From assembly GCF_902713615.1 (NCBI RefSeq), contig NC_052154.1, forward strand, positions 159,318,754 to 159,382,753: a DNA stretch of 64,000 nucleotides, read 5' to 3'. Under the pieces are notes generated by a model that ran no database searches, had not been told where the DNA came from, and saw only the letters and a list, made by a program, of their open reading frames with translations. Source of the stretch: Scyliorhinus canicula. Its lineage: Eukaryota. Of the stretch, positions 257 to 38,173 are shown one piece after another (position 1 is the stretch's first letter; every line of letters begins with the position of its first letter). Position numbers and translations under genes: made by a program.

Positions 257-289
257 CTTCTGGAAAAGTCTGTGAATTGAAAAACCCCT

Positions 290-745: not shown

Positions 746-774
746 AAGCAAGTAGGGAGAAGAATGCAGAGTCT

Positions 775-2316: not shown

Positions 2317-2524
2317 AAGGATGTTTAGAGACTAAGTGTGAGTTTTACTTTTGGAATGACAGCCTTCAAGATGAAAGCGGTCAGTCCGAAGGGTGAAATT
2401 GTTTTTCCCAACTTAGTCTCTGGTGTCAATACCAAATATTCCCAAGTCAAAGTCTAGTAAATCCAGTTTATGAATAAAACCCATTCAATCTGCCAAGGAT
2501 TGTAGCTCCAGCTTCAACTGCAGT

Positions 2525-2695
2525 AATGAAATGAAATGAAATGAAAATCGCTTATTGTCACAAGTAGGCTTCAAATGAAGTTACTGTGAAAAGCCCCTAG
2601 TCGCCACATTCCAGCGCCTGCTCGGGGAGGCTGGTATGGGAATTGAACCGTCTGCTTTAAAAGCCAGCGATTTAGCCCTGTGCTAAACCAGCTCC
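2525..2695 (-). mobile_element. Short tRNA-derived SINE with (TTTCA)n tail
   Basis: Same sequence recurs at about 34110-34285, 35930-36112, 46635-46815 and 33366-33432 (partial). B-box-like GGTTCAATTCC. Confidence 0.85.
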
Positions 2696-3074
2696 TCGGC
2701 ATCAGTATGAACTTTTCTGCTTGCTACGATATTCATTCTGGCATTGCCTCTACATTCCCATTTTTGTCATGAATTTTAAGGGGTAATTTTACACTTTTGT
2801 CAACTAGAAACTGACTGGACCGTCTCAATTTTATTTCACAGAAGACTGCAGCCAACAAGGAAAATTAGATTTTTATTTGAACAATCTGGCTGATATTGTA
2901 TCACAATCCAGGGATTAAAATAGTGCATGAGCCCAGTATGTTATCCATTTCACCAAGTTCCTTTTCTTTTTGCAAAAGGTTAACAAAATCCATTGTATAT
3001 AGTGCTGCCGTTCTCTGATGAAGACTAGAATGTTTGAAAATAATATATTAACAAAAATAAAATATCTTACTTAC

Positions 3075-3386
3075 CCAATGGAGTCAGTGAACAAGTAGTC
3101 TTTCCACAATCTCTGATACTTGCATGTCGAAATTCACAAGTTAATATTTTCCCAAAGTCTTCCCGAACAGGAATGAATTTCAAATGGCTTGTAAAATAAC
3201 AAAGGCCATCCTTTCCAAAGGCCGCTTCAGAATCAGCATTCATTTCCTCCAATACGATGTCACCCTTCCTCCAAATAACTGTAAGATCTTTTGGAAAGAA
3301 GGAATGTATTCTACAAGATGCATATGCCTGTTCATCTACAATTGGAATGTCTGGTGACAGTTTTATGTCATCACATTTTGGGATAG
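3075..3386 (-). CDS. Exon 7: third post-TM C1-like Ig domain ([12 protein letters not shown]...[10 protein letters not shown]...LTCEFRH)
   Basis: Acceptor TTTTTCCTCAG, donor TGG|GTAAGT, 312 nt. Both Cys and the Trp are present. Confidence 0.9.
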
Positions 3387-6300
3387 CTGAGGAAAAATGA
3401 GAAAATTGTAGAATTTTGATAGGAATGAGCAATAGTGAAACAGACCGCAGCAATTTTTCAAAACTGATTTTAGATCGAATCATTAAAAGGGAGCAGATAA
3501 TCACTAATTGTTAAACAGATACCGACTTCAGCTCGGCTACTGTGATACAAACGTACAATTTTAATTATGCATCTACATGGCCACTGCTTCACACAATGCA
3601 ACAAAGCAAAGGAAAAACAAATGGCTACTTATCTATTCTAGCACTGGATAGGCCCATTAGTTATCATTCCCTGGCCATTTCTCAAATGTACCTCGACGAG
3701 GAAGTATATTCAAACTTTGCAGTGCTGGTCCGTAGGCTTTGAAACTCCTCCACCTCTCCATCTCCTTCTGCTCTTTCAAGATTCTCCTTGCCCTCCCAAT
3801 ACCCGATTCTCTGACTGATTACACCTCTATGAAGACACCACAACAAGCACAAGAGAAATTGGAGACTAGGAAAGTGCAAACAAGTCAGGAGAAAGTAACG
3901 CCTGCCCAAGTCAGTCTGATATCAAATTCAGCATAATTTGAAGTTGAAACAGATCAGTTCCGAATTTTAGACAATTGTTGAATAAATTAAAATCAATGCA
4001 AATATGGATTCACTATTGAATAACCAAACTTGGTCACAACTTTCAATTTTCTTCACTTCATTATTTTACTGCAGAAAGGTGGCCTATGAGAAGTGCTTCA
4101 CTATTATAGCAAAAGTCTTTCTCTCCCTCAGGGTGAAATATTTCACTATTCCAGGTTGTTCCACCTACCACCTTATCCAAGATCTTATAAACCTGATCAC
4201 ATCTTAAGGAACAACCTACCACCTTATCCAAGATCTTATAAACCTTGTCGCATCTCAAGGAACAATGAGTTCTCGGATTGCAATACCAGCAATATTAGAT
4301 CATCAATCTTGCTGATAATCAATGACTTATCCAACCCAGTATTATTTTAACCTCTTTAAAAGTGCATTGCAATTATTGATTCTATGCTGATTTTGAAAGA
4401 ACTTAAACATTGTAGCTAAATTTGTAGAAAATCTTAAATAAAATGGAGAAATGCTGACAATACCTTTTATATTTAAATTAACCTCTTTACTTGTTACTGA
4501 ATCCGTGGCTGGATGTTTTACTTCACAAATATATACTGCTTCATTGTCTTCCTTAATGGTTGGTATAAAATGCAAAACACTGGCGACACTGTGCGTCTTG
4601 TCTTCATATTCCAGCTCAGTTATACTGTGGACATATTTTGGTTGCTCCGTTTCACTCCCTTCAACGAAATCTGCTCTTTCCGGGTGAAGTTTCACAATTT
4701 CTTTTGTTATATTGTCCTTCTGTTTGTACCAAGTGATGGCCAGTGGTCTGGGTTTGAATCCATTAATTGGGCAGGTCACAGCGAGCACTTCTTCATGAAT
4801 AATACGAGGAGGTATCACTATTTCAGTCATCCTCGGTTCAACTTTGTTTTTATGAAAAAGGGAAAAATAGAATTATGCTTTGAAAGTTCTCAAACAAACA
4901 GAATACAGACTATCTTAAACCAGAGATTTTATAAAACCCATTACCCCATCAAATATATATCAAGTACAATGGGCACTTCTACAATCCTGACAAAGAAATG
5001 CTGCAGCACAAGGTTCAAACTGTGTGTTGGCAGACTTGTAGCATTCGGCGAGGCCAATTGACAAAACAGCCAGGAACATAACTTCAGTCTTATTCAGAAC
5101 ATCTAACTATCATAGAACTTACAGTGCAGAAGGAGGCTATTCGGCCCATCGTGTCTGCACCGGCCCTTGGAAAGAGCACCCAACTTAAGCCCATGCCTCC
5201 ACCCTATCCCCGTAACCCCACCTAACTTTGTAGGCACTAAGGGGCAATTTAGCATAGCCAATCCACCTAACCTGCACATCTTTGGACTGTGGGAGGAAAC
5301 CGGACTATGGGAGACCATACTCGATATCACAACTGTATAGTTCTTTAGGCTCAAATTTAAAAGGATGTACCCACTTAAAGGAAATGGCCAAATAACAAAT
5401 AATTGTGCAAAGTTCTGAAATTAAGTTTTTAAAATTTTAAGCTTTACAAATTTAGGGGAAAAGAGCAAGAATTAATCTGCAGGATCAGACAACAAATGTG
5501 GGCTAAGATCCTAAACTTTAACGGGTCGTGCGAGCTAATTGATCCCAAAGTATCATCTATTTGCTAAACAGCAAGTCACAAAGCATTGCCTTGCTCATCC
5601 ATGCCAAGTTCTAGACTATAAGCATTGGAAAGGGTACAGAGGAGATTTACAAGGATGTTGCCTGGTATGGAGGAAAGATCTTACGAGGAAAGGCTGAAGG
5701 ACTTGAGGCTGTTTTCGTTAGAGAGAAGAAGGTTAAGAGGTGACTTTTGAGGCAGACAAGATGATCAGAGGATTAGATAGGGTGGACATTGAGAGCCTTT
5801 TTCCGCGGATCGTGATGTCCAGCACAAGGGGACATAGCTTTAAATTGAGGGGCGATAGATATAGAACAGATGTCAGAGGTAGGTTCTTTACTCAGAGAGT
5901 AGTACGGGCATGGAATGCCCTGCCTGCAACAGTAGTGGACTCGCCAACACTAAACACATTCAAATGGTCATTGGAAAGGCATATGGACGATAAGGGAATA
6001 GTGCAGATGGACTTTAGAGGGGTTTCACAGGCCGGCGCAACATCGAGGGCCGAAGGGCCTGTACTGCACTGTAATGTTCTATAAGACCATAAGATATAGG
6101 AGCAGAATTAGGCCACAGTCCATCAAGTCTGCTCCGCCATTCAATCATGGCTGATATTTTCTCATCCTCATTCTCCTCCCTTCTTCCCGTAACCTCTGAT
6201 CCCCTTATTAATCAAAAGCCCATCTCTGTCTTAAAGACACCCTTGTGATTTGGCCTCCACAGCCTTCTGCGGCAGAGTTCCACAGATTCAGCACCCTCTG

Positions 6301-9300: not shown

Positions 9301-12300
9301 CAACTGTTCCCTCTAAAGGAATGCCTATGCCTTTATTCCATGGACTTGAGGGTCGGGATTCTCCGTTGCCCGTCGTAACGCGGGTTTCCGGTGAGAAAAA
9401 TCGGTGTTAATCACTCCGGCGTCGGGGCCTTCTTTTAAGCTGGCAATCTCCGTTCCCGGAGGGGCCAGCAGCTGACTGACGCGATACGCGTCAGTTTCAC
9501 CAGCTGCGGAAGTGGTGAGACCCGGCGTTTTTTGGAGGAGGAGGAGGAGAGACACAGACCCGGCATTTGGGGGGGGGGGGGGGGGAAGAGACCCGGCATT
9601 TGGGGGGGGGGGAAGAGACCCGGCATTTGGGGGGGGGGAGAGACCCGGCATTTGGGGGGGGGGGGAGAGACCCGGCATTCGGGGGGGGGGGGGAGAGACC
9701 CGGCATTCGGGGGGGGGGGGGGAGGGAGACCCGGCATTTGGGGGGGGGGGGGGGAGGGAGACCCGGCATTTTGGGGGGGGGGGGGGGGGAGACCCGGCAT
9801 TTGGGGGGGGGGGGGAGACCCGGCATTTGGGGGGGGGGGAGACCCGGCATTTGGGGGGGGGGGGGGTTGCGGCATGGGGGGGGGTTGCGGCATTGGGGGG
9901 GGTTGCGGCATGGGGGGGGTTGCGGCATGGGGGGGGTTGCGGCATGGGGGGGGGGGTTGCGGCATGGGGGGGGGGTTGCGGCATGGGGGGGGGGGTTGCG
10001 GCATGGGGGGGTTTGCGGCATGGGGGGGGTTGCGGCATGGGGGGGGTTGCGGCATGGGGGGGTTGCGGCATGGGGGGGGGTTGCGGCATGGGGGGGGTTG
10101 TGGCATGGGGGGGTTGCGGCCAGCGGCGTGCAGAGAGGGGGGGCGACGGATGCCCGGGGCCAACGCACCGTCGCCCCCCCCCCCTCTGTACGCCGCTGCC
10201 CCCTACCCCAACCCCCCCTCACCACCCCTACCTCCCTCCCCACCACCCCCCAACGCCGCACCCCCCCCCACCCCCCACTAACGCCGCACCCCCCCCCACT
10301 AACGGAGGAAGGAGGGGGGGTAGGAGGAAGGAAGGGGGGGAGGAGGAAGGAGGGGGGGAGGAGGAAGGAGGGGGGGAGGAGGAAGGAAGGGGGGAGGGGG
10401 GAGGAGGGGGGGGAGGAGGAAGGAAGGGGGGAGGAGGAAGGAGGGGGGGAGGAGGAAGGAAGGGGGGAGGAGGAAGGAGGGGGGGGAGGAGGAAGGAGGG
10501 GGGAGGAGGAAGGAAGAGGAGGAGGAAGGAGGGGGGGAGGAGGAAGGAAGGGGGGAGGAGGAAGGAGGGGGGGAGGAGGAAGGAGGGGGGAGGAGGAAGG
10601 AAGAGGAGGAGGAAGGAGGGGGGGAGGAGGAAGGAAGGGGGGGAGGAGGAAGGAGGGGGGGAGGAGGAAGGAGGGGGGAGGAGGAAGGAGGGGGGGAGGA
10701 GGAGAGAGGGGGGGGGGGGGGATGTGTGGGTACCGGCCCTTCAGAGGGAGGGGGACGGGGTGTGGGTACCGGCGTTGGGGGGGGGGCGGGGGGGTGTGGG
10801 TACCGGCCTTCAGAGGGAGGGGGACGGGGTGTGGGTACCGGCGTTGAGGGGGGGGACCCGGCGTTGAGGGTGGGGGGTTGCGGCGTTGCGAGAGATGGGG
10901 GGCGGCGTTGGAGGGGGGTAGGGGTGGTGGGGAGGGGGGTAGGGGTGGTGGGGAGGGGGGTAGGGGCGTTGGAGGGAGGTAGGGGTGGTGAGGGGGGGGT
11001 GGTTGGGGTAGGGGGCAGCGGCGTACAGAGGGGGGGCGACGGTGCGTTGGCCCAGGGCATCCGTAGCCCCCCCTCTCTGCACGCCGCTGCCCCCAAACCC
11101 CCCCCCATGCCCCCCCCATGCTGCAACCCCCCGATGCCGCAACCCACCCCCCCGATGCCGCAACCCACCCCCCCATGCCGCAACCCACCCCCCCATGCCG
11201 CAACCCACCCACCCCCCCGATGCCGCAACCCACCCCCCCGATGCCGCAACCCACCCCCCCCGATGCCGCAACCCCCCCCCCCCCCGAGGCTGCAACCCCC
11301 CCCCGATGCCGCAACCCACCCCCCCCGATGCCGCAACCCCCCCACCCCGATGCCGCAACCCCCCCCCCCCCGATGCCACAACCCACCCCCCGACACTGAA
11401 CGGCGTCAACCATCATCAATGGTTGACGCCGTTTTAAAGCAACTGTGATTTTCGCCGACGTGACCAGACTTCGGCCCATCCGGGCCGGAGATTTGTGGAC
11501 ACTTAAAAAAAAATGAAATCCCGCCGGCGCCAGCTGTTTTCAGAGGCTGCCGGCGGGATTTGCACAACGCCGGTTTTTGGCCGGTGGGAGATTTAAAAAC
11601 CCTGCGGGAGTGGAAATAACGCCGCTGCCCGCCGATTCTCCGACCCTGCGTGGGGTCGGAGAATCCCGCCCGAGGTTCATAATGGTCTGTATTTTTATTT
11701 TAAAATGCGCTTCAGCTAAACGAAACGTGCCAACCCCTATTGGAAATGCACAAGATTGGTGAATTGCAGACCGATGGGTAAGAAAAAAAGCATCTGCACT
11801 CTAAATGTTGCAATCCTGCTGCATCTATTTCACAACTGCTCTTAATGCAAAGATAATTCTAAACACAAGGGCTGTGGCATTAAAGGGGGCAGTATAAAAT
11901 TTACAGAATAATTAGGTTAAATACATAATGGGCAGAGCTATTTGTGGTTTAATATGCCAGTGACATGTTTTACACTATTGTAAGGGTGGATCATTTTACC
12001 CAAAGAATTCTGGAAACCATTCTGTTTTTTTAATAAATTTAGAATCCCCAATTAATTTTTTTCCAATTAAGGGGCAATTTAGCGTGGCCACTCCACTTTC
12101 CATGCACATCTTTTGGGTTGTGGGGGCAAAACCCGAAACACGGGGAGAATGTGCAATCTCCACGTGGACAGTGACCCAGAGCCGGGATCAAATCTAGGAT
12201 CTAGGCGCCATGAAGCCGCAGTGCTAACCACTGTGCCACCTTGCTGCCCTTGGAAACCATTCTTTAACAAGGTAGCTTCATCTGGGTCAAAAAAGATGTG

Positions 12301-12961
12301 CATGAATATCTCTTTAAAAATAAGAGTTATTTGGTTATGTTCACTTGACATCACTTGTAATTAACACTTACTTCCTTCAACTTTCAGCGTGTCCATCTTA
12401 ATTATTGGCTTTCCAAGAGTACTATGTTCAACGTGAACCTGAAGGATAGCTCCATCATCTTTATAAATATCAGGCCAGAACATAACTTTGCAATTCACAC
12501 TGGAGCTACTGTCATTGTTGCGCTGAACAATTGGCACCTCAAATTTGAAGGATTCATCTTGTATATCAAATTGAGATTCAGGTGTTGAAATAAATGTCTG
12601 GTGGTCTTCTGGTACAGGGTCCTGCATGTCCCCGGGTGTGTAGGTCCATTCAAAAATTAGACTTGGTATCTCATCCCGTCTTCTTTGTAGTGACCAGCGA
12701 ACAGTAATATTCTCAGGCCTATACCCAGTAATCTGACAATTCAGAAGAGCCTCTTGCAAATGTACAATCCGTGGAGGTATACCAATATCAGAAACTTTGG
12801 GAGGAACTAAAAAGAAAAATAATTCTCAGTTTATCCATTCTTTGTTACAGGATCTGTCATTTTTTTAAAAATCAGCATGAATCCATCCTATGACTGAATA
12901 TTATTTCTGGAATAATAAGTATATATATATATATACATACATACATACACATTATTTATAT

Positions 12962-13002
<41 letters not shown>

Positions 13003-16000
13003 AGTAAAATGAAATCAAATAACATGTTTCTTATTGAAACAAATTTGCCTTGACCACAAATATTATTAGCATTCCCAAGTCACAATAATGATGATAGAGA
13101 GAGAGAAAGACAGAGAGATCGGTGACTAAACAAAGCAGCAGAGGTCAGTAATGCATGAAGGAAGCTAGTGTTTCACAAATCATCCAAGAAAAAGCTAGAC
13201 CCAGACAGAACAGAGATCTGGGCATGGTGCGGAGTTCTGTGGGAGCAAGCTCGCCGGGTGGGGCTGCACCCGCACCCATTTTGGTGGATATGCTGGCCGA
13301 GGTGATGCCAGTGCAGTTTGAGAGGCAGTTTGCTAAGCATTTCGAGCAGCATGGTAAGGAGATGACAGGAACGCTCAAACAGTCGGTGGAAGATACTCTG
13401 GCCCAGATAAAGGAGGCTCTTGGAATGACGGTGGGGGAGCATTGTGGGGTGTTGAAGGGGGTGGAGGAGACATTTTCACGGCACACCGACTAGCTTGCCA
13501 TGCTGTTAAAAGGAGCTAATGTGCAGGACAGTAATATAGGGCTGAGAGCCTAGGTAGAGGATCTGGAGAACAGGTCACGGGGCAGAATCTTCAGATCATG
13601 GGGATGAAGGGCTCAAGGCTGACAAGAGTATTTATCGGGATGTTTGCAAAACTGCTGGGGAGGAGGATAATACCTCCCTCTTTGAGCTAGATAGTGCTCA
13701 CTCGTCACCCCGGCTGAAGCCAAGGGCAAATGATCCACTAAGAGCTGTGATAGTCTGTTTTCTCAGCTATTAGACAAAGGAGAAGGTCTTGACATGGCGA
13801 ATCCGGAGGTCACGTGGGAAGGCAGTGGTATTCAAATATATCAGGACTTCACAGTGGAACGGGCGAGAAGGCGCACAGCCTTTAACAGAGCAAAGGCAGC
13901 ACTTTACAAGAGAGGTGTGCGGTTGGGGGTGGTCTACCCGGCGAAGCTGAGGGTTACTCATAACTCTAAGGACCATTTCTTTGAAATGGCGAAGGAGGCG
14001 CATCTTTGGGTACCCCCCAAATACTAAAGCTGGGGAGCCAGGAAGTTACCAGCTAAAAACTCCAACAGAGGTGAGCCATCTCGGCGCAGATCAAGAATAA
14101 TCATTTATACTTTTTCTATTTCTAAAGTGAAAGATATTTTACCTTTTTTGAGATACTTCAAATACACTAAAAATCCAATGCCAACGAGTGCTGTACACGC
14201 CAGAATGCTAATAAATACACATGCAGTTATTATCCCTGCTGGTACTACAACTTCGGGCTCTGTAGATAAAATAAACATTTATTTCAATTGTAAGTATAAA
14301 AATGGAGCAATATCTGCAAATTGAGACTTATTCCTAAGCAATGGTTTATATTCAACCATCAAAACTAAAATATTCAGCAAGTTAATTGAGAAAGTTTAGC
14401 ATTTCATGTCAAAGGTTCCTCAGAGTTCTGCTTAACATTAATCTATACCCCTCAAATGGTAGATAGCCTTTGCATAATTTCAGGATTTGATTTTACTTGA
14501 GCTCTAGAATTTGAGGATTAAAATCGACACAATACGTTAACTGTGACGTAGCTTCCTTAACTCATTGTACACTGCACAACAATAAGTCACATCAATTAAA
14601 AGTAAACAACAAATGGGCAGATACCAGAAATTTGAAACAGGAAATGCTACAAGCATTAATATCAGTGGAGAGAGATCAGTGAAGTTATTTTTTTGGGTGC
14701 TGAATCATTATCAATGTCGAGGCAGGCAGTCATGCAATGGGGGAAAATTTTTTAAACAACTGCCGACCCCATTATTGAGTTATTAAGTTCATGAGATCAC
14801 AGAACTGTACCAAAACATTAAATAAAGAATGTGACAAATGAATACTGAAAAGGAACATCCAACAACGAGACAAAAGGAAGCCAAAGATATATTCTAGGAC
14901 TATACATTACATAAAGTTCATGTAAACAGCTGAGGCTGTGGGAGGTTAAACAGACCGAATTACAGCACAGAAAACTGATAAAAAGGAGTAAAGTCCACAT
15001 CTCAAGAACCTGGCAAAAGAATAAAAGGTTAACACCAATGACGCAGGCTGCCTGCCAATAGAGCACTTTCTAACCTGGAAATGTAAGCACATCTACCACA
15101 ATCGCCAGTACCTCCTGACGAGAGAAAATGGGAGTAAAGTCAGTTAGTAAAGTCAATTTTAAGGTTAAAGGATTAAAGAGTGTCACGGTGCTCTTGCTGG
15201 AGCTGATCTTGAGCTTCATTAAAACAATATAAAAGGTTAAAGACAGAGAGGTCAGTGTGGAAATAGGATCGAGAAAGTAGCAAGCAAAGAAACTTTAGAG
15301 CCATATCTGTGAACAGATTAGTGATGTTCAGCAACATGATCACTGAATCTGATGTTGGAACTGATGGAAATAGAGGATGACCATTGACTGAACGTGGAAG
15401 TGGACCCAGCAAGACAGGAGGAGCAAGAGCAGACTCAAAATCAAATTTGAACTTAGCAAAGCGTGCGAACCAGAGTTAAAGGCGAAATGCGAAAATGCAA
15501 ATTAAAGATATGTTTTACTGGCTGCTCCTTCCACCTTTGATTAAATAGTGAGCAAAGGAACTTTAGAACTGTTTCAAAGTAGAAAAGTGTAAACAAAAGA
15601 GAAATGGGAAAGGTTATGGGCGCGATTACCGGCCGCGTCCTGCCGGAATCGGGACGGGGCGTAGCTGGTAGATCCTGCAAGCGGCCTCTTCCGGGATTCA
15701 CAACGGTCGTTATGCCTCGCGAGATTTAACGGGATGTCGCGATCAGTATCCCACAATGGGCGGGACCCAGAGGTGCAGAGTTAAATGAGCTTAGGCGTGG
15801 TTTAGCACTGGTCCCCACCAACGGGGACAAGGCGGAAAGGTACTTTTTGGAGGGGGGGGGGGGTCTCCCCGGTGATCGGAGGCCCCCAGTTGGTTAGTAT
15901 CAGGGCCTGGCACTGTGAATGCCACTGGAGTGCTGCCAGGGCCAAGGTGCCCGGATGCACTTTGCCTGTGCGGGGGTGCCCTGCCCTTATGAGGTTGGGT

Positions 16001-28000: not shown

Positions 28001-31000
28001 AGAGTGAGGTATTTGCAGTGAACCCTCTGGGCAAGGGAGTTGGTCTGAAGAGTTTCAACTGACCAGGAATGTAAATTGTGAGGAGCTCACAAAAGAGGCT
28101 GCAATGAGTTATGGGCAGGTTAAGTGAGTGGGCAACAAAGTGGCAGATGGTGTAATGTGAATGAGTGTTTAGTTATTCAGTTTGGCTGTAAGAATAGAAA
28201 AACAGGATTTTCTTTTGATTTTTTTTTTAAAGGTGTGAAACTTGCAAATGTTGATGTTCAGAAGGACTTGGGTTTCCTCGTATATGGTTAAATGTGCAGG
28301 TTCAGCAAGCAATTGGAAAGGCAAATAGCATGTTGGCCTTTACTGCAGGGGGATTGGAGTACATGAATAAATAAATCTTGCCACAATTGTAGAGTGTTTT
28401 GGTGAGAACCCTCCTGGAATATTGTGTGCAGTTTTGGTCTCCATATTTATGAAAGATATAATTATATTGGGGGGCAATACAGCAAATCTTCACTTGTCTG
28501 GAATGCTGGGTTGAGAGGATTGTCCTATGATGAGAGGCTAAGTAAATTGGGCCTATATTCTTTGGAGTTCAGAAGAATGGAAGTTGATCTTATTAAAACA
28601 TACAAGATTCTGAAAGGACTTAACAGGGTAGGCCTAGAGGTTGTTTGCCCTGGCTAGGAAACCAGAAATACAGTCACAGGATACCGCAGCTCAAGATAAA
28701 CACCAAAGTTAAATCCAAGAATTAAATCCAGGTTAGATCAAGTACGGTTAGATGAGGATGGCCAGTCACTTAAGTATGTTTGAAAGTAACAGGAGAAGTT
28801 AGTCTGATGAGAATTACCTTGAAAAAAATCTGCCCGAGTACACCATCTTAAGATGACTGTGATGGGGAAAGAGACAGTCTACTTCCTTGTGGAATGTGCC
28901 TTTGTAAACAAGGTCCAGAGAAAGATGCAGAGATTTATGTTGAGGCTTTTCCTGAGCAGATCTATGACACAGGACCCAGTGCTCTATGGGCTGTTCCCAG
29001 GAACGCACACCAAGGTAAACATCAGCTGCATCAGTAAAATCATCAACTTGGCGAAAGACACTCATTGACCGGCCCGGAATTTGCTGTCTTAAAGTGCAAG
29101 AGTTGTCCTCAACCATGTATTGCAGACTGCACAATCTAAGGGCCAGGACTACGAGCTTGGGGCAGCCACTGCAGAGGCACAGTGGGGAAAGGATGTTATC
29201 CAAGGCCTTTCAGCCATAGTACACTGAGGGACTGGAAACTTTATTAAACATCTTTGGCTATACGCCTGACAAATAACGTACATTATGAGCACAGGTGTAT
29301 TGACATTGTATTGAAGGACCTCAGAGTTGAGCATGCTGCATAGAAAAAAGTCGAATTCTATGTCACTTACTTTAATGTTCAATTTGTGATGTTTTGCCTA
29401 AAGATTGAATTCTTGGCGTATAATGTATGGAGGACAAATTAATTTTATTACACTTTCTGTAACTTAAAGTCAAAATGTTTTGCAATATACTTCTATAAAT
29501 TTTATGAATAAAGTATATTCCTGGGGGGAAAAAAATCTGAAAATCTAAAAAAGCTAAAGCGGGGGAAGAATCTTCCTCCCAACCTGTTCAAACTTCAAAT
29601 TCACCAGAGAACTGACCTCCTGGCAATTCAACTGTAAGAACCTCACAGATCATTGAGAATACTCCGCTTTACCTAAACTCAACTTTAGCTACAGATCAAT
29701 TCAGCCAAGAAACTACAGGCCTGCTACAAAGGGACTAATATCATTACAACTTGTAATTGTATTGCGTTTCTCCTCAGCTCATCTATGCTGTGTTTGATAA
29801 CTTGTGAGAGTGTTAAAACCTCAGGGTAAGAGTGTGATAATAAATAATATTTATCTTTAAATTTACAAACGCGTGATACTGGAAATTATTTAAATCAAGA
29901 CAATTCACTGAGTTTAATACAATACACATACCTCATAAATAAAAGATACTATGATCAAGGACAACAATAAAACACAAATTCTGTCCATGACTTTATATAA
30001 TCAGAACTATTGAAATGCTCTACACACTTGTATTTTTTTCCCTCATCATATTTGTTCCAGAAAGTTTCATGAGCGATAGTTAATCAGACATCAGTCAAGC
30101 AGCCACTGCTGATATGACAAATTTGACATCCAGTCTGGGCAGGCTGTTTAATTGAGGAGATTTTTAGTCAAATTCCAGAAGCACAAACCTTCAACCGGGG
30201 TCATTTAGTTCAGATCGGTAATTGTGGTAGGAGCTGAAAAGAATCGGAGCACTGAATTTTCAGTTTTAAATATGTGACTGAAAGAAACTTTTCCCATTTT
30301 GGTGATATCAGAGCAAAATTTTAGCATTCATTTTGTATCTGAATTTTCTAACACAAAGCACGCCTCGTGTGCAAGTACATCAAAATGTTAAACTTACCTT
30401 TTACAGTCAGTTGTGTCATCAATTGTAAAGCTCCACTAAGTGATCGGTGGTTTACATAGCATATATAAGTATTGCCATTGTCTTGGAGAGTTGGGCGCAA
30501 TCTCAAACGGCTAGAAACACTGTAGGTTCCATCATCATTTTTAACTGGGGATTCTGTGCAGATGTGTTTTGAAATGATCTTTTCCCCATCTTTTGTTTTC
30601 TGTCTCCAATTCATCTCAATTGAGACAGGGTAAAAGCCAGAACTGACACACTTCACTGACTTCTCTGTACCGTTCTCAATTGTGATTGCAGGTGAGGATA
30701 ATTTCACCATTGGTTGGGCTGTGAAGATCAATACAACAGATGTTTAATGCTTAATACGAGCATATTTTTTTCATTATTTCACATTGCATGGTCATGTAAT
30801 GACTGTACACATTGAAATCAATAAAGCTGAACATATCCTTTCCTCACAACTCGAGAGAAAGGGTTACAATGTGTAGGGGAAAGCAATACATCAGCAAAGC
30901 GTATGGTATTCTACCCTAAGAAAACAAGACACTTGAGGATGTTTAATTCAAAGAAAATTCATACAAACAAAAAGGTGCACTCGAAGCTGCGGGATTTTAG

Positions 31001-34000
31001 ATATCAGACCGGTGTGTGGTATATTGTTGAATACCTTTGCATGACCTGTTCGAACTGACCTGTTTTAAATTTAATGCAGTAACAATTAAACAGATTGCAT
31101 GAGCAAAGAAAGAAATAATTGTTAGTGACTCTTACCCGAAACAGTCATTGATGATTTCCCAATTCCATTATCTGGGGTTATAAAAACAACACAAGTGTAA
31201 TCTCCTTCCTCATTAAATTGCACACGTGGAAGAAAGAGAGAAGGAATTCCCTTCTTCAACTCATCATCAAAAATTGTTGCTCCTTGTCTATACGGCGTAT
31301 GTTTTCCACTAGTGAATTGATACACCTCTCGTTTTTGTGAATCGGGTGTGCCTAATGCTTGGAAGAGCCACTGGACTCCCACATCTTTAAGGTCAATTTC
31401 TTTTGTATAACCAGATACACGGCATTCGAGGAGAACATCTTCATTTACGATGGCTTTCACAGTTCTTGAATTCATTGTCACAATTAGGTTACCTTGCTCT
31501 GCAATAATTGAAACCAAAGTTATCAGCACGTAAAATTTATCCAACAGTAGGGAAATCAAAATTAAAATGATCACTTTTTTTAATAATCTTTATTGTCACA
31601 AGTAGGATTACATTAACACTGCAATGAAGTTATCGTGAAAAGCCCCTAGTCGCCAATCCGGCACCTGTTCGGGTACACAGAGGGAGAATTTAGAATGCCC
31701 AAATTACCTGTCAGCGCGTCTTTCAGGACTTGTGGGAGAAAACCGCAGGAAACACACGCAGACATGGGGAGAACGTGCAGACTCCGCACAATGATGTAAG
31801 CCGGGAATCGAACCTTGGACCCTGAAGCTGTGAAACACCAGTGCTAACCACTGTGCTAGTGTGCTATAGTTTTTCAATTGTTGTAAATTAATGACCCTAA
31901 AGTTATTCCTTTCATAGCATGAATGTGCATCTCACAAAACAACTCCATTGTGAGATTTCCTAATATTTCTTCATAAAGATGCTATGGATTTTTTATATTT
32001 AGTCTTGCACAGCACACCCACGAGCAAAATACTTCCCGTCATCTTAACAACAGCTTGCATTTATACAACACCTTCAAAACAACACCTTCAAAATAGGATA
32101 ACATCCCAAGCGCTTCACAAAAGCACAGTCAAACTTTAGCAGAGAAGAGGAGGGCGCTTTTTTGGCCTGCCCACCAGGGGACGCATACACAGTTATGGCT
32201 GCTAAATCTCGCCATAACGGGATTTGCACCGGGAGATCTCACTTTGAGATCTGCTCCGCAGCCCCCAGCAACGTAATCAGGTTTACGCCTAGTGAAGGCA
32301 TCACCCTGATTATCATGCATTTGCTTGGATTTTAATATTCAAAAAACAGCTTTTATGCCATTGCTTCTGGATTAACTAAAGTTCCAGCATGCCAGCAGGA
32401 ATCACTACTGGTTTCCAAAAACTCACCATGCCGGCGACACAGAGGTGAGGTCCTCCAGGTGGTGAGAGACATTGGCATTTCCAGGAATGGTGCCTCCAGG
32501 GAACCCTATTGGGGACTGACCACTTTTGGGGGGGGGGGGAATGCCAGCGTTGTTGTGAACTGATGTTTATAGATGGTGCAGAGTGCCTTTGCCTCCCTGA
32601 TCGCCCACCGTAGAATCCTGTTCGGCTGGCGGTCAGCAGCACCACCCAAAGCTGCAGACTGGCTGTCCGACCGATCAGAATCTCTCCAAATGGAGAAAAT
32701 CAAATTCTCCATCCAAGGATCAGACGACGGCTTCCACAGAACATGGGAGCCATTCACCCAACTGCTCCGGGACCTGTTTGTGGCCAACGAGCAAGCAGAA
32801 GAACAGCCAGGGAGCCAAGAATCTGGGGAAGTAGCCAAGGCGTGAGAGAGAGGGATAGACCGGGGGGACCAGCTAAACCTAGGAGAAAAGAAAGACGAAC
32901 AACAGGAAAACAGGGGGGGGGGGGGGGGGAAGGAGGAGGAGACAGGGAACAATAGAGGGGAACCAGGGGAGGGGGGGGGGGGGGGGGGAGGCATGGAAAT
33001 GATAGCCGGAAGGACTATAACAAACTTGGCAAATACAGGAACAGAGAGCAAGGAAAACATGGGACGAATGGCCGAAGCGGAGGTGAGCGCAACGACAAGC
33101 AGCAAAAACCGGGAGAAGCAAGTAACAACACCAACACCAGATCCATTCTCATATTGCCCTCTCTGCATTGGACATAACCAATGTAATTGTTTCTCTGGCA
33201 CCCAAATGTATATGTACCTCCCCAGTCCCCCCACCGCCCCAAACAGCTGCCTACTTATGTGTTTAAAATATTGCTAACTGTACAGAGTTGCTGTTGTTGA
33301 GCTAGTGCGCAATATCGTCCCAGTTTTTAAAAAAAAAACTTTTCTTCTCTTCTATGTAGATAAATTAGGGGCCTTTCACAGTAACTTCATTTGAAGCCTA
33401 CTTGTGACAATAAGCGATTTTCATTTCATTTCAAATTTTATTCTGTGTGCATAATATACTTTGTACAAAAAAATTTATTAATAAAAAGATGGTGTAGAGC
33501 AGGCAATGAGTGTTTTTACAATAGTAGAGCCTGGGAGTTGACAAAAGCATCATTGAGGCTTCGATAACAAATTAAATCCAAGCCGAAATAGGGAATATTA
33601 TAGATGTGGAAGTAGGCAGCCTTTGGAATGGACAGAAATGGGGTCAGAAATTCAGCTCAGAACTAAATAGGACACTGCAGTTGTGAACGGTCTGATTCAA
33701 CCCAAAACAGGAGTTGAAAATAAGATCCAATTGAGATAAATGTACCTCTACATGAATCTGTGGTAGGGGCATTGTCTTTATTGATGTCCAATTTGAATAA
33801 TCTGCAGCCCACCCATGACTAAGTGCAAGACAAGCATGCTGAGAGAAGCAGGGGAGATCAGAGATGGTGGTGATGTAAAATTGATTGTCACTGGTATACA
33901 GGTAGCCAAAGACAGTTGGCTGGATCCCAGCTGTCGGGATTTTCCACTGTGCCTGCAGCCCAGGGATTTCCCTCAATGGGAAACCCCATTGGCCAGCTGG

Positions 34001-37000: not shown

Positions 37001-38173
37001 GTTACATCTTCGAAGAACTCTGGCAAATTAGTCAAACATGACTTACCCTGCATAAAACCATGCTGACTCGGATGGATTTTCTTCTGACTTTCCAAATGCC
37101 CTGTTATTACTTCCTTAATAATGGATTCCAACAATTTCCCAATGACATGTTCAACTAACTGGTCTATGGTTTCCTACATTCTGCCTCACTCTCTTTTTGA
37201 ATAAAGGCTTTAAATTAGCATTTTTCCAATCCATTGGAACCTTTCCCGCATCCAGGGAATTTTGGATTATAACTATTAATTCCACTATCTCTGCTGGCAC
37301 TTCTTTCAAGACCCTTGGATGAAGGTCATCTGGCTCGGGGGACTTGTCTGCCCTCAGTCTGCCCTCAATCCCAATAATATGTTCGGAATTTTTTTTGCTA
37401 TTGATGAGGATTGTTCTCAAGTTCCTCCCAAGAACACCAACCTCCCCACCCGAAGACTCATTAGGTCGGGTCAGCGCAGGTCTCCCACCAAGCACAGGCA
37501 CCATGCTGGCATCAGGGTGACCCAAGGCAGCGGCACACTGGCTAACACTGCATCCTCACAGCACCAGGGCCCCGGGTTCAATGCCAGCCTCAGGTCACCG
37601 TCTGTGTGGAGTTTGCACGCTCTCGCCATGTCGGTGTGGGTTTCCTCCGGGTGCTCCGGTTTCCTCCCACAGCCCAAAGATGTACAGGTTTGGACTGATC
37701 AATGCGTGTGGTTACGGGACATGGCGGGAGGGTGGGACGAGGTAGGGTGCTCTTTCAGAGGGCCTGTGCAGAAGCGATGGGCCGAATAGTCTCCTTCTGC
37801 ACTGTAGGGATTGTAGACGATCCCAAAGTGAGTTCTCCCCGGCGCAAATCCGGTTATAGCCCTCTCACGATCTGCGTCCACAGCGAACATGGACATTGCC
37901 CCCTTGTTTTTTTGGAGTGAAGCTACTTCGTCACAAAAAAGTCAGGAACAATGAATTTACATTTGATCTAAACTGCATTGACTTGCAATCCGAAAAGGTA
38001 CATCAGGATGCGGGAGGGTCGGCTCTGCTCCAATGTCCATTTACACCTGCGGAAACATCCACGACCAAACCCAGCTTCACACCAGCCGCTCCCGCCGCCC
38101 GTCCTTTACCTGAAAACCGTGCCAGAGTCACCAGCGCCACCAGAAGCGGCCACGAGTTCCCGGTCCGGCCCAT
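3075..38173 (-). CDS. Multi-exon Ig-superfamily membrane protein, B7/NCR3LG1 (B7-H6)-like: SP-IgV-IgC1-TM-(C1-like Ig)x3, 3' end not located. Exons: 38110-38173, 31136-31498, 30398-30718, 14143-14259, 12372-12806, 4464-4841, 3075-3386
   Basis: Seven minus-strand exons (64+363+321+117+435+378+312 = 1990 nt) each bounded by AG/GT. All introns are phase 1 and the spliced frame is open. V-C1-TM with one Ig domain per phase-1 exon is typical of the B7 family. The NCR3LG1-like assignment is from recalled motif similarity and has not been searched. Confidence 0.88.
4163..4264. repeat. 51-bp tandem duplication (2 copies)
   Basis: ACCTACCACCTTATCCAAGATCTTATAAACCT... starts at 4163 and again at 4214. 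Confidence 0.95.
4464..4841 (-). CDS. Exon 6: second post-TM C1-like Ig domain ([31 protein letters not shown]...YICEVKH)
   Basis: Acceptor ...TTTTTCATAAAAACAAAG, donor AAG|GTATTG, 378 nt. Both Cys and the Trp are present. Confidence 0.9.
5110..5310 (-). mobile_element. tRNA-derived SINE with CR1-like tail (HE1-like), partial
   Basis: Shares the core CCAATCCACCTAACCTGCACATCTTTGGACTGTGGGAGGAAACCGG with many copies in the window. Confidence 0.85.
5612..6083 (+). mobile_element. CR1 LINE 3' fragment
   Basis: ORF 5740-6084 reads [33 protein letters not shown], followed by the CR1 3' tail. Confidence 0.92.
6084..6780 (-). mobile_element. CR1 LINE 3' fragment, tail-to-tail with the preceding copy
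   Basis: ORF 6208-6579 reads [26 protein letters not shown]. The tail begins immediately at the end of the + strand copy. Confidence 0.92.
7513..7843. repeat. Near-perfect long inverted repeat (164/162-bp arms, 5-nt loop)
   Basis: 7513-7676 is the reverse complement of 7682-7843 with 2 substitutions and one 2-nt indel. Confidence 0.97.
7845..7900 (+). mobile_element. Possible hAT (Charlie-like) transposon left end
   Basis: CAGAGATTGGCAACC...GGGCCACATGCGGC resembles hAT MITE termini. The other end was not identified. Confidence 0.4.
8571..8905 (-). mobile_element. Full-length tRNA-derived SINE (HE1-like) with (TTCTATG)n CR1-type tail
   Basis: tRNA-like head GGGCAGCACGGTAGCATGGTGGTTAGC...GGTTCGATTCCC. 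Near-identical copy at 18750-19073 on the + strand. Confidence 0.92.
9020..9285 (-). mobile_element. tRNA-derived SINE (second subfamily)
   Basis: Same head as above with a different tail. A similar copy lies at 31580-31860. Confidence 0.85.
9351..11671. mobile_element. PIF/Harbinger-like MITE expanded by internal G-rich tandem repeats
   Basis: 15-bp TIRs GG(T/G)CGGGATTCTCCG at 9351-9365 and 11657-11671. 3-bp TSD GAG at 9348-9350 and 11672-11674. Confidence 0.8.
9528..11395. repeat. Compound G/C-rich minisatellite: (GAGACCCGGCATTT-Gn)n, (GGTTGCGGCAT-Gn)n, (GGAGGAGGAAGGA-Gn)n, (GTGGGTACCGGC..)n and the inverted (Cn-ATGCCGCAACC)n
   Basis: Units are directly visible. They account for all the Pro/Gly-rich ORFs at 9325-11479. 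Confidence 0.95.
12024..12250 (-). mobile_element. Short A-tailed tRNA-derived SINE with 13-bp TSD
   Basis: TGGAAACCATTCT at 12011-12023 and 12251-12263. Confidence 0.92.
12372..12806 (-). CDS. Exon 5: first post-TM C1-like Ig domain ([29 protein letters not shown]...)
   Basis: Acceptor TTTTTCTTTTTAG, donor GAA|GTAAGT, 435 nt. B-strand Cys and C-strand Trp present. The F strand reads [10 protein letters not shown], without the canonical Cys. Confidence 0.9.
12921..13002. repeat. (TA)n-rich microsatellite
   Basis: Direct reading. It lies about 115 nt from the exon 5 acceptor. Confidence 0.95.
13150..14030 (+). mobile_element. L1-clade LINE ORF1 remnant (no ORF2)
   Basis: [31 protein letters not shown] and [10 protein letters not shown] are L1 ORF1 (RRM/CTD) motifs. 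Disrupted by stops. Confidence 0.85.
14143..14259 (-). CDS. Exon 4: transmembrane exon ([39 protein letters not shown])
   Basis: Acceptor TTTATTTTATCTACAG, donor AAAAAAG|GTAAAA, 117 nt, phase 1/1. About 25 uncharged hydrophobic residues followed by a basic KYLKK stop-transfer. Too short for the ORF track, so read manually. Confidence 0.88.
15618..17468. mobile_element. Harbinger-like MITE interrupted by a CR1 insertion
   Basis: Left end GGGCGCGATT at 15618, right end GATTGCGCCG at 17468. Flanks TAT/GAT form an imperfect 3-bp TSD. Confidence 0.55.
15980..17345 (-). mobile_element. CR1 LINE internal ORF2 fragment
   Basis: ORF 15802-16455 reads [23 protein letters not shown] and KFAEDTK. Also [13 protein letters not shown]. 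Confidence 0.92.
18750..19073 (+). mobile_element. Full-length HE1-like SINE inserted in the L1 5' region
   Basis: Near-identical to 8571-8905, with a (GTTCTAT)n tail. Confidence 0.92.
21221..21560 (+). mobile_element. Deu-domain SINE (SacSINE1/AmnSINE-like)
   Basis: Core CATCTAGTTCACTAATGTCCTTT...CTGCCATCCTTTACCTGG..GGCCTACATGTAACTCCAG recalled as the DeuSINE central domain. A second copy lies at 34720-35075 (-). Confidence 0.75.
22477..27103 (+). mobile_element. Younger near-full-length L1/Tx1-clade LINE (ORF1 internally deleted, ORF2 frameshifted)
   Basis: EN ([12 protein letters not shown]; GEDFN), RT ORF 24109-25308 ([40 protein letters not shown]), C-terminal HMFW.CP, A-rich tail. Degenerate 12-bp TSD AAG(TT/AC)TTACAAC. 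Confidence 0.95.
27148..27182 (-). ncRNA. Second hammerhead motif on the opposite strand, with a degenerate stem II
   Basis: Reverse complement reads CAC-CUGAGGA-A-GGACAAGUGUUCC-GAAA-GCUA-GUG. There are three substitutions in stem II. Confidence 0.5.
27193..27227 (+). ncRNA. Minimal type I hammerhead ribozyme motif
   Basis: CAC-CUGAGGA-A-GGAGC(AGU)GCUCC-GAAA-GC-UA^-GUG: catalytic core boxes, 5-bp stem II, 3-bp stem I (CAC/GUG), predicted cleavage after A27224. Confidence 0.75.
28065..28655 (+). mobile_element. Degenerate CR1 LINE 3' fragment
   Basis: [32 protein letters not shown]. Confidence 0.85.
28800..29535 (+). mobile_element. Tx1-like LINE 3' end (ORF2 C-terminal zinc-knuckle region, 3' UTR, A-tail)
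   Basis: ETV.FLVECAF and [10 protein letters not shown] motifs. AATAAA followed by an A-rich end at about 29530. Confidence 0.7.
30398..30718 (-). CDS. Exon 3: IgC1-set domain
   Basis: Acceptor TTCACAG, donor AAG|GTAAGT, 321 nt. Motifs [23 protein letters not shown] and YICYVNH are canonical C1-set. Confidence 0.95.
31136..31498 (-). CDS. Exon 2: IgV-set domain
   Basis: Acceptor ATTGCAG, donor G|GTAAGA, 363 nt. B-strand Cys (VLLEC), C-strand Trp (VQW), F-strand EEGDYTC. Confidence 0.95.
31580..31860 (-). mobile_element. tRNA-derived SINE next to the exon 2 acceptor
   Basis: Similar to 9020-9285. Confidence 0.85.
32570..33490 (+). mobile_element. L1-clade 3' fragment (ORF2 C-terminus and 3' UTR)
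   Basis: [26 protein letters not shown] matches the minus-strand L1 at 59526-59708. Confidence 0.88.
34110..34285 (-). mobile_element. Short tRNA-derived SINE
   Basis: Same family as 2525-2695. Confidence 0.85.
34720..35075 (-). mobile_element. Deu-domain SINE
   Basis: Reverse complement resembles 21221-21560. Confidence 0.75.
35327..35553 (+). mobile_element. Short poly(A)-tailed tRNA-derived SINE with 15-bp TSD
   Basis: AAGAAAGCCATAACA at 35312-35326 and 35554-35568. Confidence 0.93.
35930..36112 (-). mobile_element. Short tRNA-derived SINE inside CR1
   Basis: Same family as 2525-2695. Confidence 0.85.
37530..37815 (+). mobile_element. HE1-like SINE in intron 1
   Basis: Head GGCAGCGGCAC..., core GGTTTCCTCCGGGTGCTCCGGTTTCCTCCCACAG, CR1-like tail. 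Confidence 0.8.

What the first reader, a model, noticed from the sequence alone, without database searches (positions are those of the whole stretch)
3075..38173. B7-H6-like receptor/ligand whose transmembrane helix is followed by at least three C1-type Ig domains that would be intracellular
Seen in sequence: a 117-nt phase-1/1 exon (14143-14259) encoding about 25 hydrophobic residues plus KYLKK lies between the IgC1 exon and three more Ig exons. The signal peptide and the positive-inside cluster give a type I topology, so the downstream C1-like domains would face the cytosol. Established: C1-set domains are normally extracellular or lumenal hallmarks of adaptive-immune molecules (MHC, TCR, Ig, tapasin, some B7), and mammalian B7-H6 has no Ig domains in its tail. 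Inference: this may be a lineage-specific B7-family signalling system in which repurposed cytosolic Ig folds act as scaffolds. I have an unverified recollection of similar architectures among amphibian B7-family genes, so novelty needs a literature check.
Basis: partly seen in the sequence, partly recalled or inferred. Interest (0 to 1): 0.9.

Follow-up and report, generated by a model that had tools for sequence, protein, structure and literature searches.

The report
Shark B7-H6 with intracellular Ig tail
This is the small-spotted catshark's B7-H6-type immune ligand gene, and RNA data confirm that its membrane-spanning segment is followed by antibody-constant-type domains that should sit inside the cell, an arrangement conserved from chimaeras to frogs and not described in any paper I could reach.

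Summary
On the minus strand lie a leader, a V exon, a C1 exon, a 117-nt transmembrane (TM) exon and three C1-set Ig exons, all phase 1. The 663-aa splice product is 100% identical to Scyliorhinus canicula XP_038663979.1 (LOC119971842, 773 aa). A fourth tail Ig exon lies off-window.

Spliced RNA contigs from four runs join C1>TM>d1>d2>d3, so this is one transcript that includes the TM exon.

The ectodomain is B7-H6-like: best PDB sequence hit is human NCR3LG1 at 3e-30, and the fold match has TM-score 0.9. The nurse-shark orthologue is deposited as B7H6.

The architecture (signal peptide, V, C1, one TM, 2-14 Ig domains, no second TM) recurs in 130 of 156 relatives, from chimaera, sharks, rays, coelacanth, lungfish, bichir and frogs. 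Each tail domain position forms its own clade, so the array is ancestral and not lineage-specific.

A cytosolic tail is inferred from type I topology and from ancient loss of the canonical disulfide in four of six tail domains.

Caveats: RefSeq isoforms in two sharks and a frog skip exactly the TM exon, which would give a fully secreted form. The sequon statistic is weak. Tail function is unknown.

The parts
38110..38173 (-). Exon 1, coding part: start codon and signal peptide ([21 protein letters not shown]), ending in phase 1
   Evidence: ATG at 38173, donor GT after 38110. Identical to the N-terminus of XP_038663979.1. The X2 RNA contig extends 711 nt 5' of the TM exon, which equals C1 + V + 27 nt.
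31136..31498 (-). V-set Ig exon (ectodomain)
   Evidence: Pfam V-set 5e-10. Both canonical Cys are present (C47, C124). Together with the C1 exon it is the best PDB sequence match to human B7-H6.
30398..30718 (-). C1-set Ig exon (membrane-proximal ectodomain), with an NGT sequon
   Evidence: Pfam C1-set 5e-14. The loose end at the TM exon in four runs reads the last 30 nt of this exon. Foldseek places V+C1 on B7-H6 with TM-score 0.88-0.91 and rmsd 2.1-2.9 A.
14143..14259 (-). 117-nt transmembrane exon (39 codons, phase 1-1): EPE, about 31 hydrophobic residues, then KYLKK
   Evidence: AF2 predicts a helix at 266-286. Included in the RNA contigs of all four runs. The orthologous exon is skipped precisely in RefSeq isoforms of Carcharodon, Cetorhinus and Bombina.
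12372..12806 (-). Tail Ig domain d1: a C1-set derivative with an acidic insert that AF2 predicts at low confidence. The F-strand Cys is replaced by Val.
   Evidence: Joint 14143>12806 in four runs. Pfam C1-set 2e-4. Cys pattern C-V, conserved across lineages. AF2 pLDDT >90 outside the 348-371 loop.
4464..4841 (-). Tail Ig domain d2: C1-set with both canonical Cys. It is the tail domain most conserved at deep divergence.
   Evidence: The loose end at 12372 reads the start of this exon. Joint 4464>3386. Pfam C1-set 2e-9. 52% identical to coelacanth, against 42% for V.
3075..3386 (-). Tail Ig domain d3: C1-set with both canonical Cys plus four further Cys. Donor GT at 3074-3073.
   Evidence: Joint 4464>3386 in four runs. 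Pfam C1-set 1.6e-6. RNA contigs continue 611-1532 nt beyond it into sequence that is not in the window.

Best explanation
What it is:
- The locus is the Scyliorhinus canicula member (LOC119971842) of the B7-H6/NCR3LG1 family.
- Its main transcript encodes a type I membrane glycoprotein. The signal peptide and a V-C1 ectodomain face outward. By homology the ectodomain is the ligand face for an NKp30-family receptor.
- One transmembrane helix follows, and then a tail of four Ig domains derived from the C1-set (d1-d4; d4 is off-window). This tail lies in the cytosol.

How old it is:
- The layout is ancient. At least six tail domains in fixed order were already present in the common ancestor of jawed vertebrates.
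- Catsharks and their relatives later lost d5-d6.
- Mammals have a GAG-like tail in that place.

Soluble form:
- The 117-nt TM exon is symmetrical, so skipping it keeps the reading frame. RefSeq isoforms in two lamniform sharks and a frog skip it.
- That probably yields a soluble form, much as TM-exon skipping does for Fas (from my own knowledge). In that form the tail would be carried out of the cell.

Shown: exon structure, splicing, family membership of the ectodomain, Ig fold of the tail, conservation.
Inferred: cytosolic location, from topology rules and disulfide erosion.
Speculative: the tail acts as a cytoplasmic scaffold or sensor that couples the cell's interior to display of the ectodomain, as the B30.2 domain does in butyrophilins.
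For: Gene structure and transcript:
- Exon model with AG/GT sites and phase 1.
- 100% identity to XP_038663979.1 over 663 aa.
- Spliced RNA contigs in four runs with joints C1>TM>d1>d2>d3 and no intron depth.

Ectodomain:
- Best PDB sequence hit is human NCR3LG1 at 3e-30, against CD276 at 1.5e-21.
- Foldseek TM-score 0.88-0.91 on B7-H6.
- The nurse-shark orthologue QTT61907.1 is named B7H6 by its depositors.

Tail fold:
- Pfam C1-set hits.
- Nearest solved sequences are SIRP C1 domains, Ig heavy-chain constant domains and UrIg2.
- AF2 pLDDT >90 for every tail domain.

Topology:
- One hydrophobic segment, an acidic flank before it and a K/R-rich flank after it, in all aligned relatives.
- 130 of 156 relatives of 500 aa or more have one TM followed by 2-14 Ig domains. 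None has a second hydrophobic segment.

Signature consistent with a reducing compartment:
- Both canonical Cys are present in 90% of ectodomain C1 domains but in only 48% of 603 tail domains. The replacements are V/L/F/I.
- The pattern d1 C-V, d2 C-C, d3 C-C, d4 C-V, d5 C-F, d6 V-C holds in most representatives from sharks to coelacanth, bichir and frog, with a few substitutions.
- Several frog paralogues end in long charged low-complexity tails after the Ig array.

Antiquity:
- C1e and d1-d6 each form a single clade across nine proteins from eight species (SH-aLRT 86-99).
Against: - No experiment shows the topology.
- d2 and d3 keep both canonical cysteines in every orthologue. That would be expected if a disulfide forms in an oxidising compartment.
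- TM-less isoforms are annotated in three species. They would put the whole array into the secretory pathway.
- The N-glycosylation sequon density of the tail does not differ from that of the ectodomain in ten lineage representatives (0.81 vs 0.88 per 100 aa). The difference seen in the whole family rests mostly on frog paralogues.
- The catshark tail has three sequons against 1.5 expected.
- Logan contigs drop rare variants, so TM-exon skipping in the catshark itself is not excluded. One contig (run X11) ends 26 nt into the C1 exon. I read that as possibly a graph branch at that exon junction.
- No function is shown for the tail.
Confidence: 0.7

Rival explanations
1. The tail Ig domains do their work outside the cell. 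The functional product would be the TM-less splice form, a secreted V-C1-(C1)n protein resembling a non-rearranging Ig such as UrIg. The TM-containing mRNA would only be a tethering or regulatory variant whose tail is incidental.
For: - Exact in-frame TM-exon skipping in RefSeq isoforms of Carcharodon, Cetorhinus and Bombina.
- Nine relatives have a signal peptide but no TM.
- d2 and d3 keep both disulfide cysteines in all orthologues.
- The tail domains are bona fide C1-set, a class otherwise known only from extracellular or lumenal proteins.
- Tail sequon density is not below that of the ectodomain in orthologues.
Against: - The TM-containing form is what assembles in all four catshark runs.
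- It is the only or first model in most species. 130 of 156 relatives carry the TM.
- The TM exon and its positive-inside flank have been kept since the gnathostome ancestor.
- Four of six tail domains lost the canonical disulfide long ago, which is very unusual for secreted C1-set domains.
- TM-exon skipping to make soluble decoys is common and does not define where the tail normally works (Fas precedent, from my own knowledge).
Confidence: 0.2
2. The tail is an evolutionary passenger without function of its own. Ig exons would have been captured behind a B7-H6 TM exon by exon shuffling, which is easy because all exons are phase 1-1, and are translated into the cytosol as inert or poorly folded mass.
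For: - Phase compatibility makes such a fusion easy.
- The number of tail domains varies from 2 to 14. Galeomorph sharks lost d5-d6. One Hemiscyllium isoform skips d1.
- Mammals have a different tail in that place.
Against: - Position-specific clades for d1-d6 across about 450 million years.
- d2 is more conserved than the V domain at deep divergence (52% vs 42% to coelacanth).
- There are invariant residues in every tail domain.
- All tail domains are predicted as confident Ig folds.
Confidence: 0.06
3. There are two neighbouring genes, or an assembly or read-through artefact. A B7-H6-like gene would end at the TM exon, and a separate Ig gene would supply the downstream exons.
For: Phase 1-1 exons of neighbouring Ig genes can be joined in silico without breaking the frame. 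There is a 16-kb transposon-rich intron before the TM exon.
Against: - Single RNA contigs in four independent runs cross C1>TM>d1>d2>d3.
- No leader or V exon lies between 14143 and 12806.
- The same continuous open reading frame is modelled in more than 20 species and was deposited for nurse shark.
Confidence: 0.01

Closest known systems
Human B7-H6 (NCR3LG1), ligand of NKp30
   Same: - Signal peptide, V domain, C1-type domain and a single TM. Type I membrane protein.
- The catshark ectodomain's best solved relative by sequence (3e-30) and by fold (TM-score 0.9, 30% identity).
- The nurse-shark orthologue and several frog models carry this name.
   Different: The human tail is about 170 aa, homologous to retroviral GAG, and carries ITIM-like and SH2/SH3-binding motifs (PMC2715080). 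The catshark tail is four Ig domains (six to eight in other fishes, up to 14 in frogs) with no such motifs noted.
Butyrophilins (BTN/BTNL), B7-related V-C proteins with a cytosolic B30.2 domain
   Same: A B7-like V-C ectodomain, one TM, and then a large folded cytosolic domain. In BTN3A1 that domain senses intracellular ligands and changes what the ectodomain shows (from my own knowledge). This is the best functional analogy for a folded intracellular module behind a B7-type ectodomain.
   Different: No B30.2/SPRY domain was found here (Pfam). The tail consists of Ig domains of the C1-set. The analogy concerns architecture only. No sensing function has been shown.
Shark UrIg/UrIg2 and SIRP family: V followed by several C1-set domains
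   Same: A V domain followed by a run of C1-set domains. UrIg2 and SIRP C1 domains are among the nearest solved relatives of both halves of the protein. The TM-skipped isoform would look like these proteins.
   Different: In UrIg2 (nine C1 domains, then TM and cytoplasmic tail; PMC12227049) and in SIRP, the TM comes after all Ig domains, so they are all extracellular. Here the TM sits after the second domain, and four of six downstream domains lack the canonical disulfide.
Cytosolic Ig-fold arrays: titin/obscurin I-set domains, and the FN3 domains in the integrin beta-4 tail
   Same: Tandem beta-sandwich domains that fold in the cytosol without the B-F disulfide. The titin fragment I65-I70 is the top whole-chain Foldseek match. 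Integrin beta-4 is a precedent for Ig-like-fold domains in the cytoplasmic tail of a type I receptor (from my own knowledge).
   Different: Those domains are I-set or FN3, not C1-set. The tail domains here keep C1-set hallmarks: the G-F/Y-x-P motif, a Trp in 94% of domains, and the x-V-x-H motif after the F-strand position.

Membership tests
B7-H6 / NCR3LG1 family | V-set plus C1-type Ig ectodomain whose nearest characterised relative is B7-H6 rather than another B7 member | tested here: met
   phmmer against PDB: NCR3LG1 3e-30, CD276 1.5e-21, TAPBPR 8e-14. Foldseek: B7-H6 chains at TM-score 0.88-0.91, rmsd 2.1-2.9 A, 30% identity.
B7-H6 / NCR3LG1 family | Type I membrane protein with leader, V, C and TM each on its own phase-1 exon | tested here: met
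   Exon model, hydropathy, RNA joints.
B7-H6 / NCR3LG1 family | Binds an NKp30 (NCR3) family receptor | not testable with these tools
Shark NCR3 genes exist according to Kinlein et al. 2021, which I know only from reference lists.
B7-H6 / NCR3LG1 family | Orthology by conserved synteny with human NCR3LG1 | not tested
   The window holds no informative neighbour, only an IQUB-like frameshifted copy and transposons. The genomic locus could not be fetched.
B7-H6 / NCR3LG1 family | GAG-like cytoplasmic tail with ITIM/SH2/SH3 motifs (mammalian form) | tested here: not met
   The tail is four Ig domains. Pfam finds only Ig families. The feature belongs to the mammalian protein and need not define the family.
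Immunoglobulin C1-set domain (tail domains d1-d4) | Significant match to the C1-set profile, with nearest relatives among C1-set proteins | tested here: met
   Pfam PF07654: d2 2e-9, d3 1.6e-6, d1 2e-4 over part of the domain. Three stretches in the catshark protein and up to seven in coelacanth pass the threshold on their own. PDB neighbours are SIRP C1 domains, Ig CH domains, UrIg2 and beta-2-microglobulin/MHC alpha-3.
Immunoglobulin C1-set domain (tail domains d1-d4) | Canonical B-strand and F-strand cysteines forming the intradomain disulfide | tested here: inconclusive
   Present in d2 and d3. The F-strand Cys is Val in d1 and d4. Family-wide, both Cys occur in 48% of 603 tail domains against 90% of ectodomain C1 domains. 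Whether any disulfide forms cannot be told from sequence.
Immunoglobulin C1-set domain (tail domains d1-d4) | Extracellular or lumenal location (true of all characterised C1-set domains, from my own knowledge) | not testable with these tools
   Topology rules place the tail in the cytosol in the TM-containing form and outside the cell in the TM-skipped form.
Butyrophilin family | Cytosolic B30.2 (PRY/SPRY) domain after the TM | tested here: not met
   No SPRY/PRY hit in the catshark protein or in five relatives.

The most novel reading that the evidence does not exclude
C1-set Ig domains are regarded as an extracellular hallmark of the adaptive immune system. Under this reading they have worked inside the cytosol since the origin of jawed vertebrates, as a conserved module of 4-8 domains on the tail of B7-H6. 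The module would link the interior state of a cell to the display of, or signalling through, an NK-receptor ligand. Mammals have a GAG-derived tail in its place.
Probability: 0.4. Interest if true: 0.85.

Novelty: new variant of a known kind. Interest (0 to 1): 0.68.

Why it matters
B7-H6/NKp30 is one of the few NK receptor-ligand pairs traceable from sharks to humans, and the function of the B7-H6 tail is obscure even in humans. Three points follow from this locus:

- If the ancestral tail was a fixed array of C1-set Ig domains in the cytosol, a domain class thought to be purely extracellular has an intracellular use.
- B7-H6 would then resemble the butyrophilins in pairing a B7-type ectodomain with a large folded cytosolic module.
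- The mammalian GAG-like tail would be a later substitute.

The question is directly testable: topology assays, partner pull-downs and structures of d2-d3. The cassette TM exon also predicts a soluble B7-H6 form in cartilaginous fish and amphibians.

Tried and rejected
- **N-glycosylation sequons.** Across 109 relatives the ectodomain looked enriched (obs/exp 1.74) and the tail did not (1.13). In ten lineage representatives the two densities are the same (0.88 vs 0.81 per 100 aa, Fisher p = 0.69). I do not use this as evidence for location.
- **Odd or unpaired cysteine counts per domain.** No useful difference between the ectodomain C1 and the tail.
- **TM-exon skipping in the catshark itself.** One contig ends 26 nt into the C1 exon, which is only suggestive.
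- **Literature.** Nine full-text searches found no description of Ig domains in a B7-H6 tail. The three most relevant papers are not held: Flajnik et al. 2012 (PMC3709836), Ohta & Flajnik 2015 (PMC4594805) and Kinlein et al. 2021 (PMC8273117). Prior description cannot be excluded.
- **The search for homologous proteins** with the coelacanth tail found few relatives because of its word index. The taxon spread therefore rests on the roughly 70 proteins whose source names I saw. None is from an amniote or a teleost, and one weak hit (E ~6e-13) is a mussel Ig protein. Absence from those groups is not shown.
- **Fetching the genomic locus** for the off-window exon and neighbours failed because the file is too large.
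- **Whole-chain Foldseek** is dominated by generic multi-Ig chains and says little about the tail.
- **Rfam** found nothing in the window.
- **No complex prediction was run**, because I claim no binding partner.

Full report
**Observation**

The gene lies on the minus strand.

| Exon | Window coordinates |
|---|---|
| leader | 38173-38110 |
| V | 31498-31136 |
| C1 | 30718-30398 |
| transmembrane (TM) | 14259-14143 |
| d1 | 12806-12372 |
| d2 | 4841-4464 |
| d3 | 3386-3075 |

Every internal exon has AG/GT sites, and all introns are phase 1. The last exon ends at a GT donor, so the gene continues past the window.

Pfam calls V-set for the V exon, C1-set for the C1 exon, and C1-set for each of the three downstream exons. 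The 117-nt exon gives the only hydrophobic segment of the product, about 31 residues followed by KYLKK.

**Transcript evidence**

Four runs from four studies hold the d1 exon. Laid on 12200-14400 and on 1-5000, their contigs cover the exons and not the introns, so they are spliced RNA.

- All four carry the joints 14143>12806 and 4464>3386, with GT..AG ends on the gene's strand.
- At the 5' edge of the TM exon the contigs run on into letters that are the reverse complement of the last 30 nt of the C1 exon.
- At the 3' edge of d1 they run on into the first 30 nt of d2.
- One contig reaches 711 nt upstream of the TM exon, which is C1 + V + 27 nt.
- Others reach 611-1532 nt beyond d3, and none of that maps to window 1-3074.

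So leader-V-C1-TM-d1-d2-d3 and more is a single mRNA.

**Identity**

A phmmer search of the d2 exon against 1.84 billion representatives gave only 188 hits. The best are proteins of 600-2158 aa with 3-13 matching stretches. This is a distinct family and not generic Ig noise.

My 663-aa model is 100% identical to residues 1-663 of XP_038663979.1, 'uncharacterized protein LOC119971842' of Scyliorhinus canicula, 773 aa. The gene spans about 50 kb in that assembly. The extra 110 residues are a fourth tail Ig domain.

Orthologues exist in at least 20 cartilaginous fishes. [quoted passage not shown] More distant members come from Callorhinchus (two tandem loci), Latimeria, Protopterus, Erpetoichthys/Polypterus and many frogs. 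Some of the frog models are annotated NCR3LG1.

**The two halves of the protein**

The V-C1 ectodomain's best solved relative is human B7-H6, by sequence (3e-30, ahead of CD276 at 1.5e-21) and by fold (TM-score 0.88-0.91, rmsd 2.1-2.9 A, 30% identity).

The tail's nearest solved relatives are all C1-set: SIRP C1 domains, Ig heavy-chain constant domains, UrIg2, and beta-2-microglobulin/MHC alpha-3.

An AlphaFold2 model built on 30 homologues has mean pLDDT 85. It shows a TM helix at 266-286. All four tail domains are beta-sandwiches with pLDDT above 90, apart from an acidic loop in d1 and a short loop in d2.

**Conservation of the architecture**

- Of 156 relatives of at least 500 aa, 130 have one TM followed by 2-14 Ig domains. 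None has a second hydrophobic segment.
- In many relatives the protein ends right after the last Ig domain, with a recurring ...LKLS-type C-terminus.
- The TM flanks follow the positive-inside rule in every aligned relative, acidic before and K/R-rich after.
- In a tree of 69 domains from nine proteins (chimaera x2, catshark, nurse shark, sawfish, coelacanth, lungfish, reedfish, frog), the ectodomain C1 and each of d1-d6 form one clade apiece, with SH-aLRT 86-99.

The array and its order therefore predate the split between cartilaginous and bony vertebrates. 'Lineage-specific' is wrong. Catsharks, houndsharks, lamniforms and bullhead sharks have lost d5-d6.

At deep divergence d2 is the best-conserved part of the whole protein, at 52% identity to coelacanth against 42% for V.

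**Where is the tail?**

The signal peptide, the single TM and the charge flanks make the TM-containing form type I. The tail is then cytosolic. This is inference from established topology rules.

One sequence signature fits that reading. The two canonical cysteines are both present in 90% of ectodomain C1 domains but in only 48% of 603 tail domains, replaced by V, L, F or I as in cytosolic Ig folds. The loss is position-specific and old. The pattern d1 C-V, d4 C-V, d5 C-F, d6 V-C holds in most representatives from sharks to coelacanth, bichir and frog, with a few substitutions, while the C1-set x-V-x-H motif stays. Several frog paralogues also end in long charged low-complexity stretches.

Three points count against it or leave it open:

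- d2 and d3 keep both cysteines in all orthologues.
- The sequon test that looked good on the whole family vanished in a set of lineage representatives, so I discard it.
- No experiment exists.

**The cassette exon**

RefSeq isoform pairs differ by exactly the TM exon: Carcharodon carcharias (781/742 aa), Cetorhinus maximus (781/742 aa) and Bombina bombina NCR3LG1 (1085/1051 aa). Skipping is in frame and would give a signal peptide followed only by Ig domains, that is, a secreted protein.

This is the main rival reading, namely that the tail works outside the cell. I rate it lower for four reasons:

- The TM form is what assembles in all four catshark runs.
- The TM is present in most models.
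- The TM exon and its flanks have been kept for about 450 million years.
- In-frame TM-exon skipping is a common way to make soluble decoys that carry their cytoplasmic domain along as a passenger (soluble Fas, from my own knowledge).

Skipping in the catshark itself could not be tested with the calls I had.

**Comparison with what is known**

Human B7-H6 is a 454-aa type I protein whose intracytoplasmic domain is homologous to GAG polyprotein (PMC2715080). The shark protein shares the ectodomain and TM but not the tail.

Butyrophilins offer the closest working analogy: a B7-type ectodomain with a folded cytosolic domain. They use B30.2, which is absent here.

UrIg2 and SIRP have a V domain followed by runs of C1 domains, all before the TM (PMC12227049).

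Titin-type I-set arrays and the integrin beta-4 FN3 tail are precedents for beta-sandwich domains in the cytosol, but none of them is C1-set.

**Novelty**

The gene model and its orthologues are already in public databases, and the nurse-shark protein is named B7H6. The locus is therefore a member of a known family.

What seems undescribed is the conserved tail of C1-set domains behind the TM, and the cassette TM exon. Nine full-text searches found nothing on either. The three papers most likely to mention it are not in the library, so I cannot exclude prior description. I file it as a new variant of a known kind.

**Verdict**

| Claim | Status |
|---|---|
| Observation | confirmed |
| One gene, one transcript | shown |
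| B7-H6 family ectodomain | shown |
| Tail made of C1-set-derived Ig folds | shown |
| Ancestral and conserved architecture | shown |
| Cytosolic location in the main form | probable (about 0.7) |
| Function of the tail | unknown; a cytoplasmic scaffold or sensor role is speculation |

Noticed in passing
window 42083-42803 (+): Two adjacent open frames, split by a frameshift near 42361-42372, together match the IQUB-like domain (PF25805, 7e-33 and 6e-9). There is no intron between them, so this looks like a processed, decayed copy of an IQUB-type gene upstream of the B7-H6-like gene's first exon.
   Followed up: partly
window 9575-11391: A block of G-rich (C-rich on the other strand) minisatellites with periods 17, 18, 21 and 26-27 nt and 10-23 copies each. 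It lies inside the 7.5-kb intron between d1 and d2. GC rises to 0.65, and the block creates long spurious open frames on both strands.
   Followed up: partly
window about 2506-2839, and a shorter piece at 12205-12254: Repeat with very high depth in RNA contigs (84,000-356,000 at 2506-2672). The sequence looks to me like a tRNA-derived SINE in reverse orientation. Rfam gave no match at gathering score.
   Followed up: partly
window 24109-25308 (+), 15805-16455 (-), 60335-61393 (-), 53684-54616 (-): Transposon remains: three reverse-transcriptase (RVT_1) fragments of LINE type, two of them inside the 16-kb intron before the TM exon, and one RNase H plus integrase fragment of an LTR element.
   Followed up: partly
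relatives: P0199/P0174 (Hemiscyllium ocellatum isoforms X1/X2): Isoform X2 lacks exactly the 145-aa d1 exon while keeping the TM exon. Exon-level alternative splicing of the tail may therefore go beyond the TM cassette.
   Followed up: no
relatives: frog proteins P0006, P0019, P0037, P0047 (1700-2158 aa): Anuran paralogues have up to 14 tail Ig domains followed by long acidic or K/R-rich low-complexity C-termini. Some models lack both signal peptide and TM, and at least some of those start inside an Ig domain, so they look like fragments. The family is greatly expanded in frogs.
   Followed up: partly
window 3325, 4572, 4597, 4669 (tail exons d2, d3): Single-base differences between the assembly and the RNA contigs. 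4669 A>T appears in all four runs, 3325 T>C in three, and 4572/4597 in one. These are probably alleles. No DNA from the same animals was checked.
   Followed up: no
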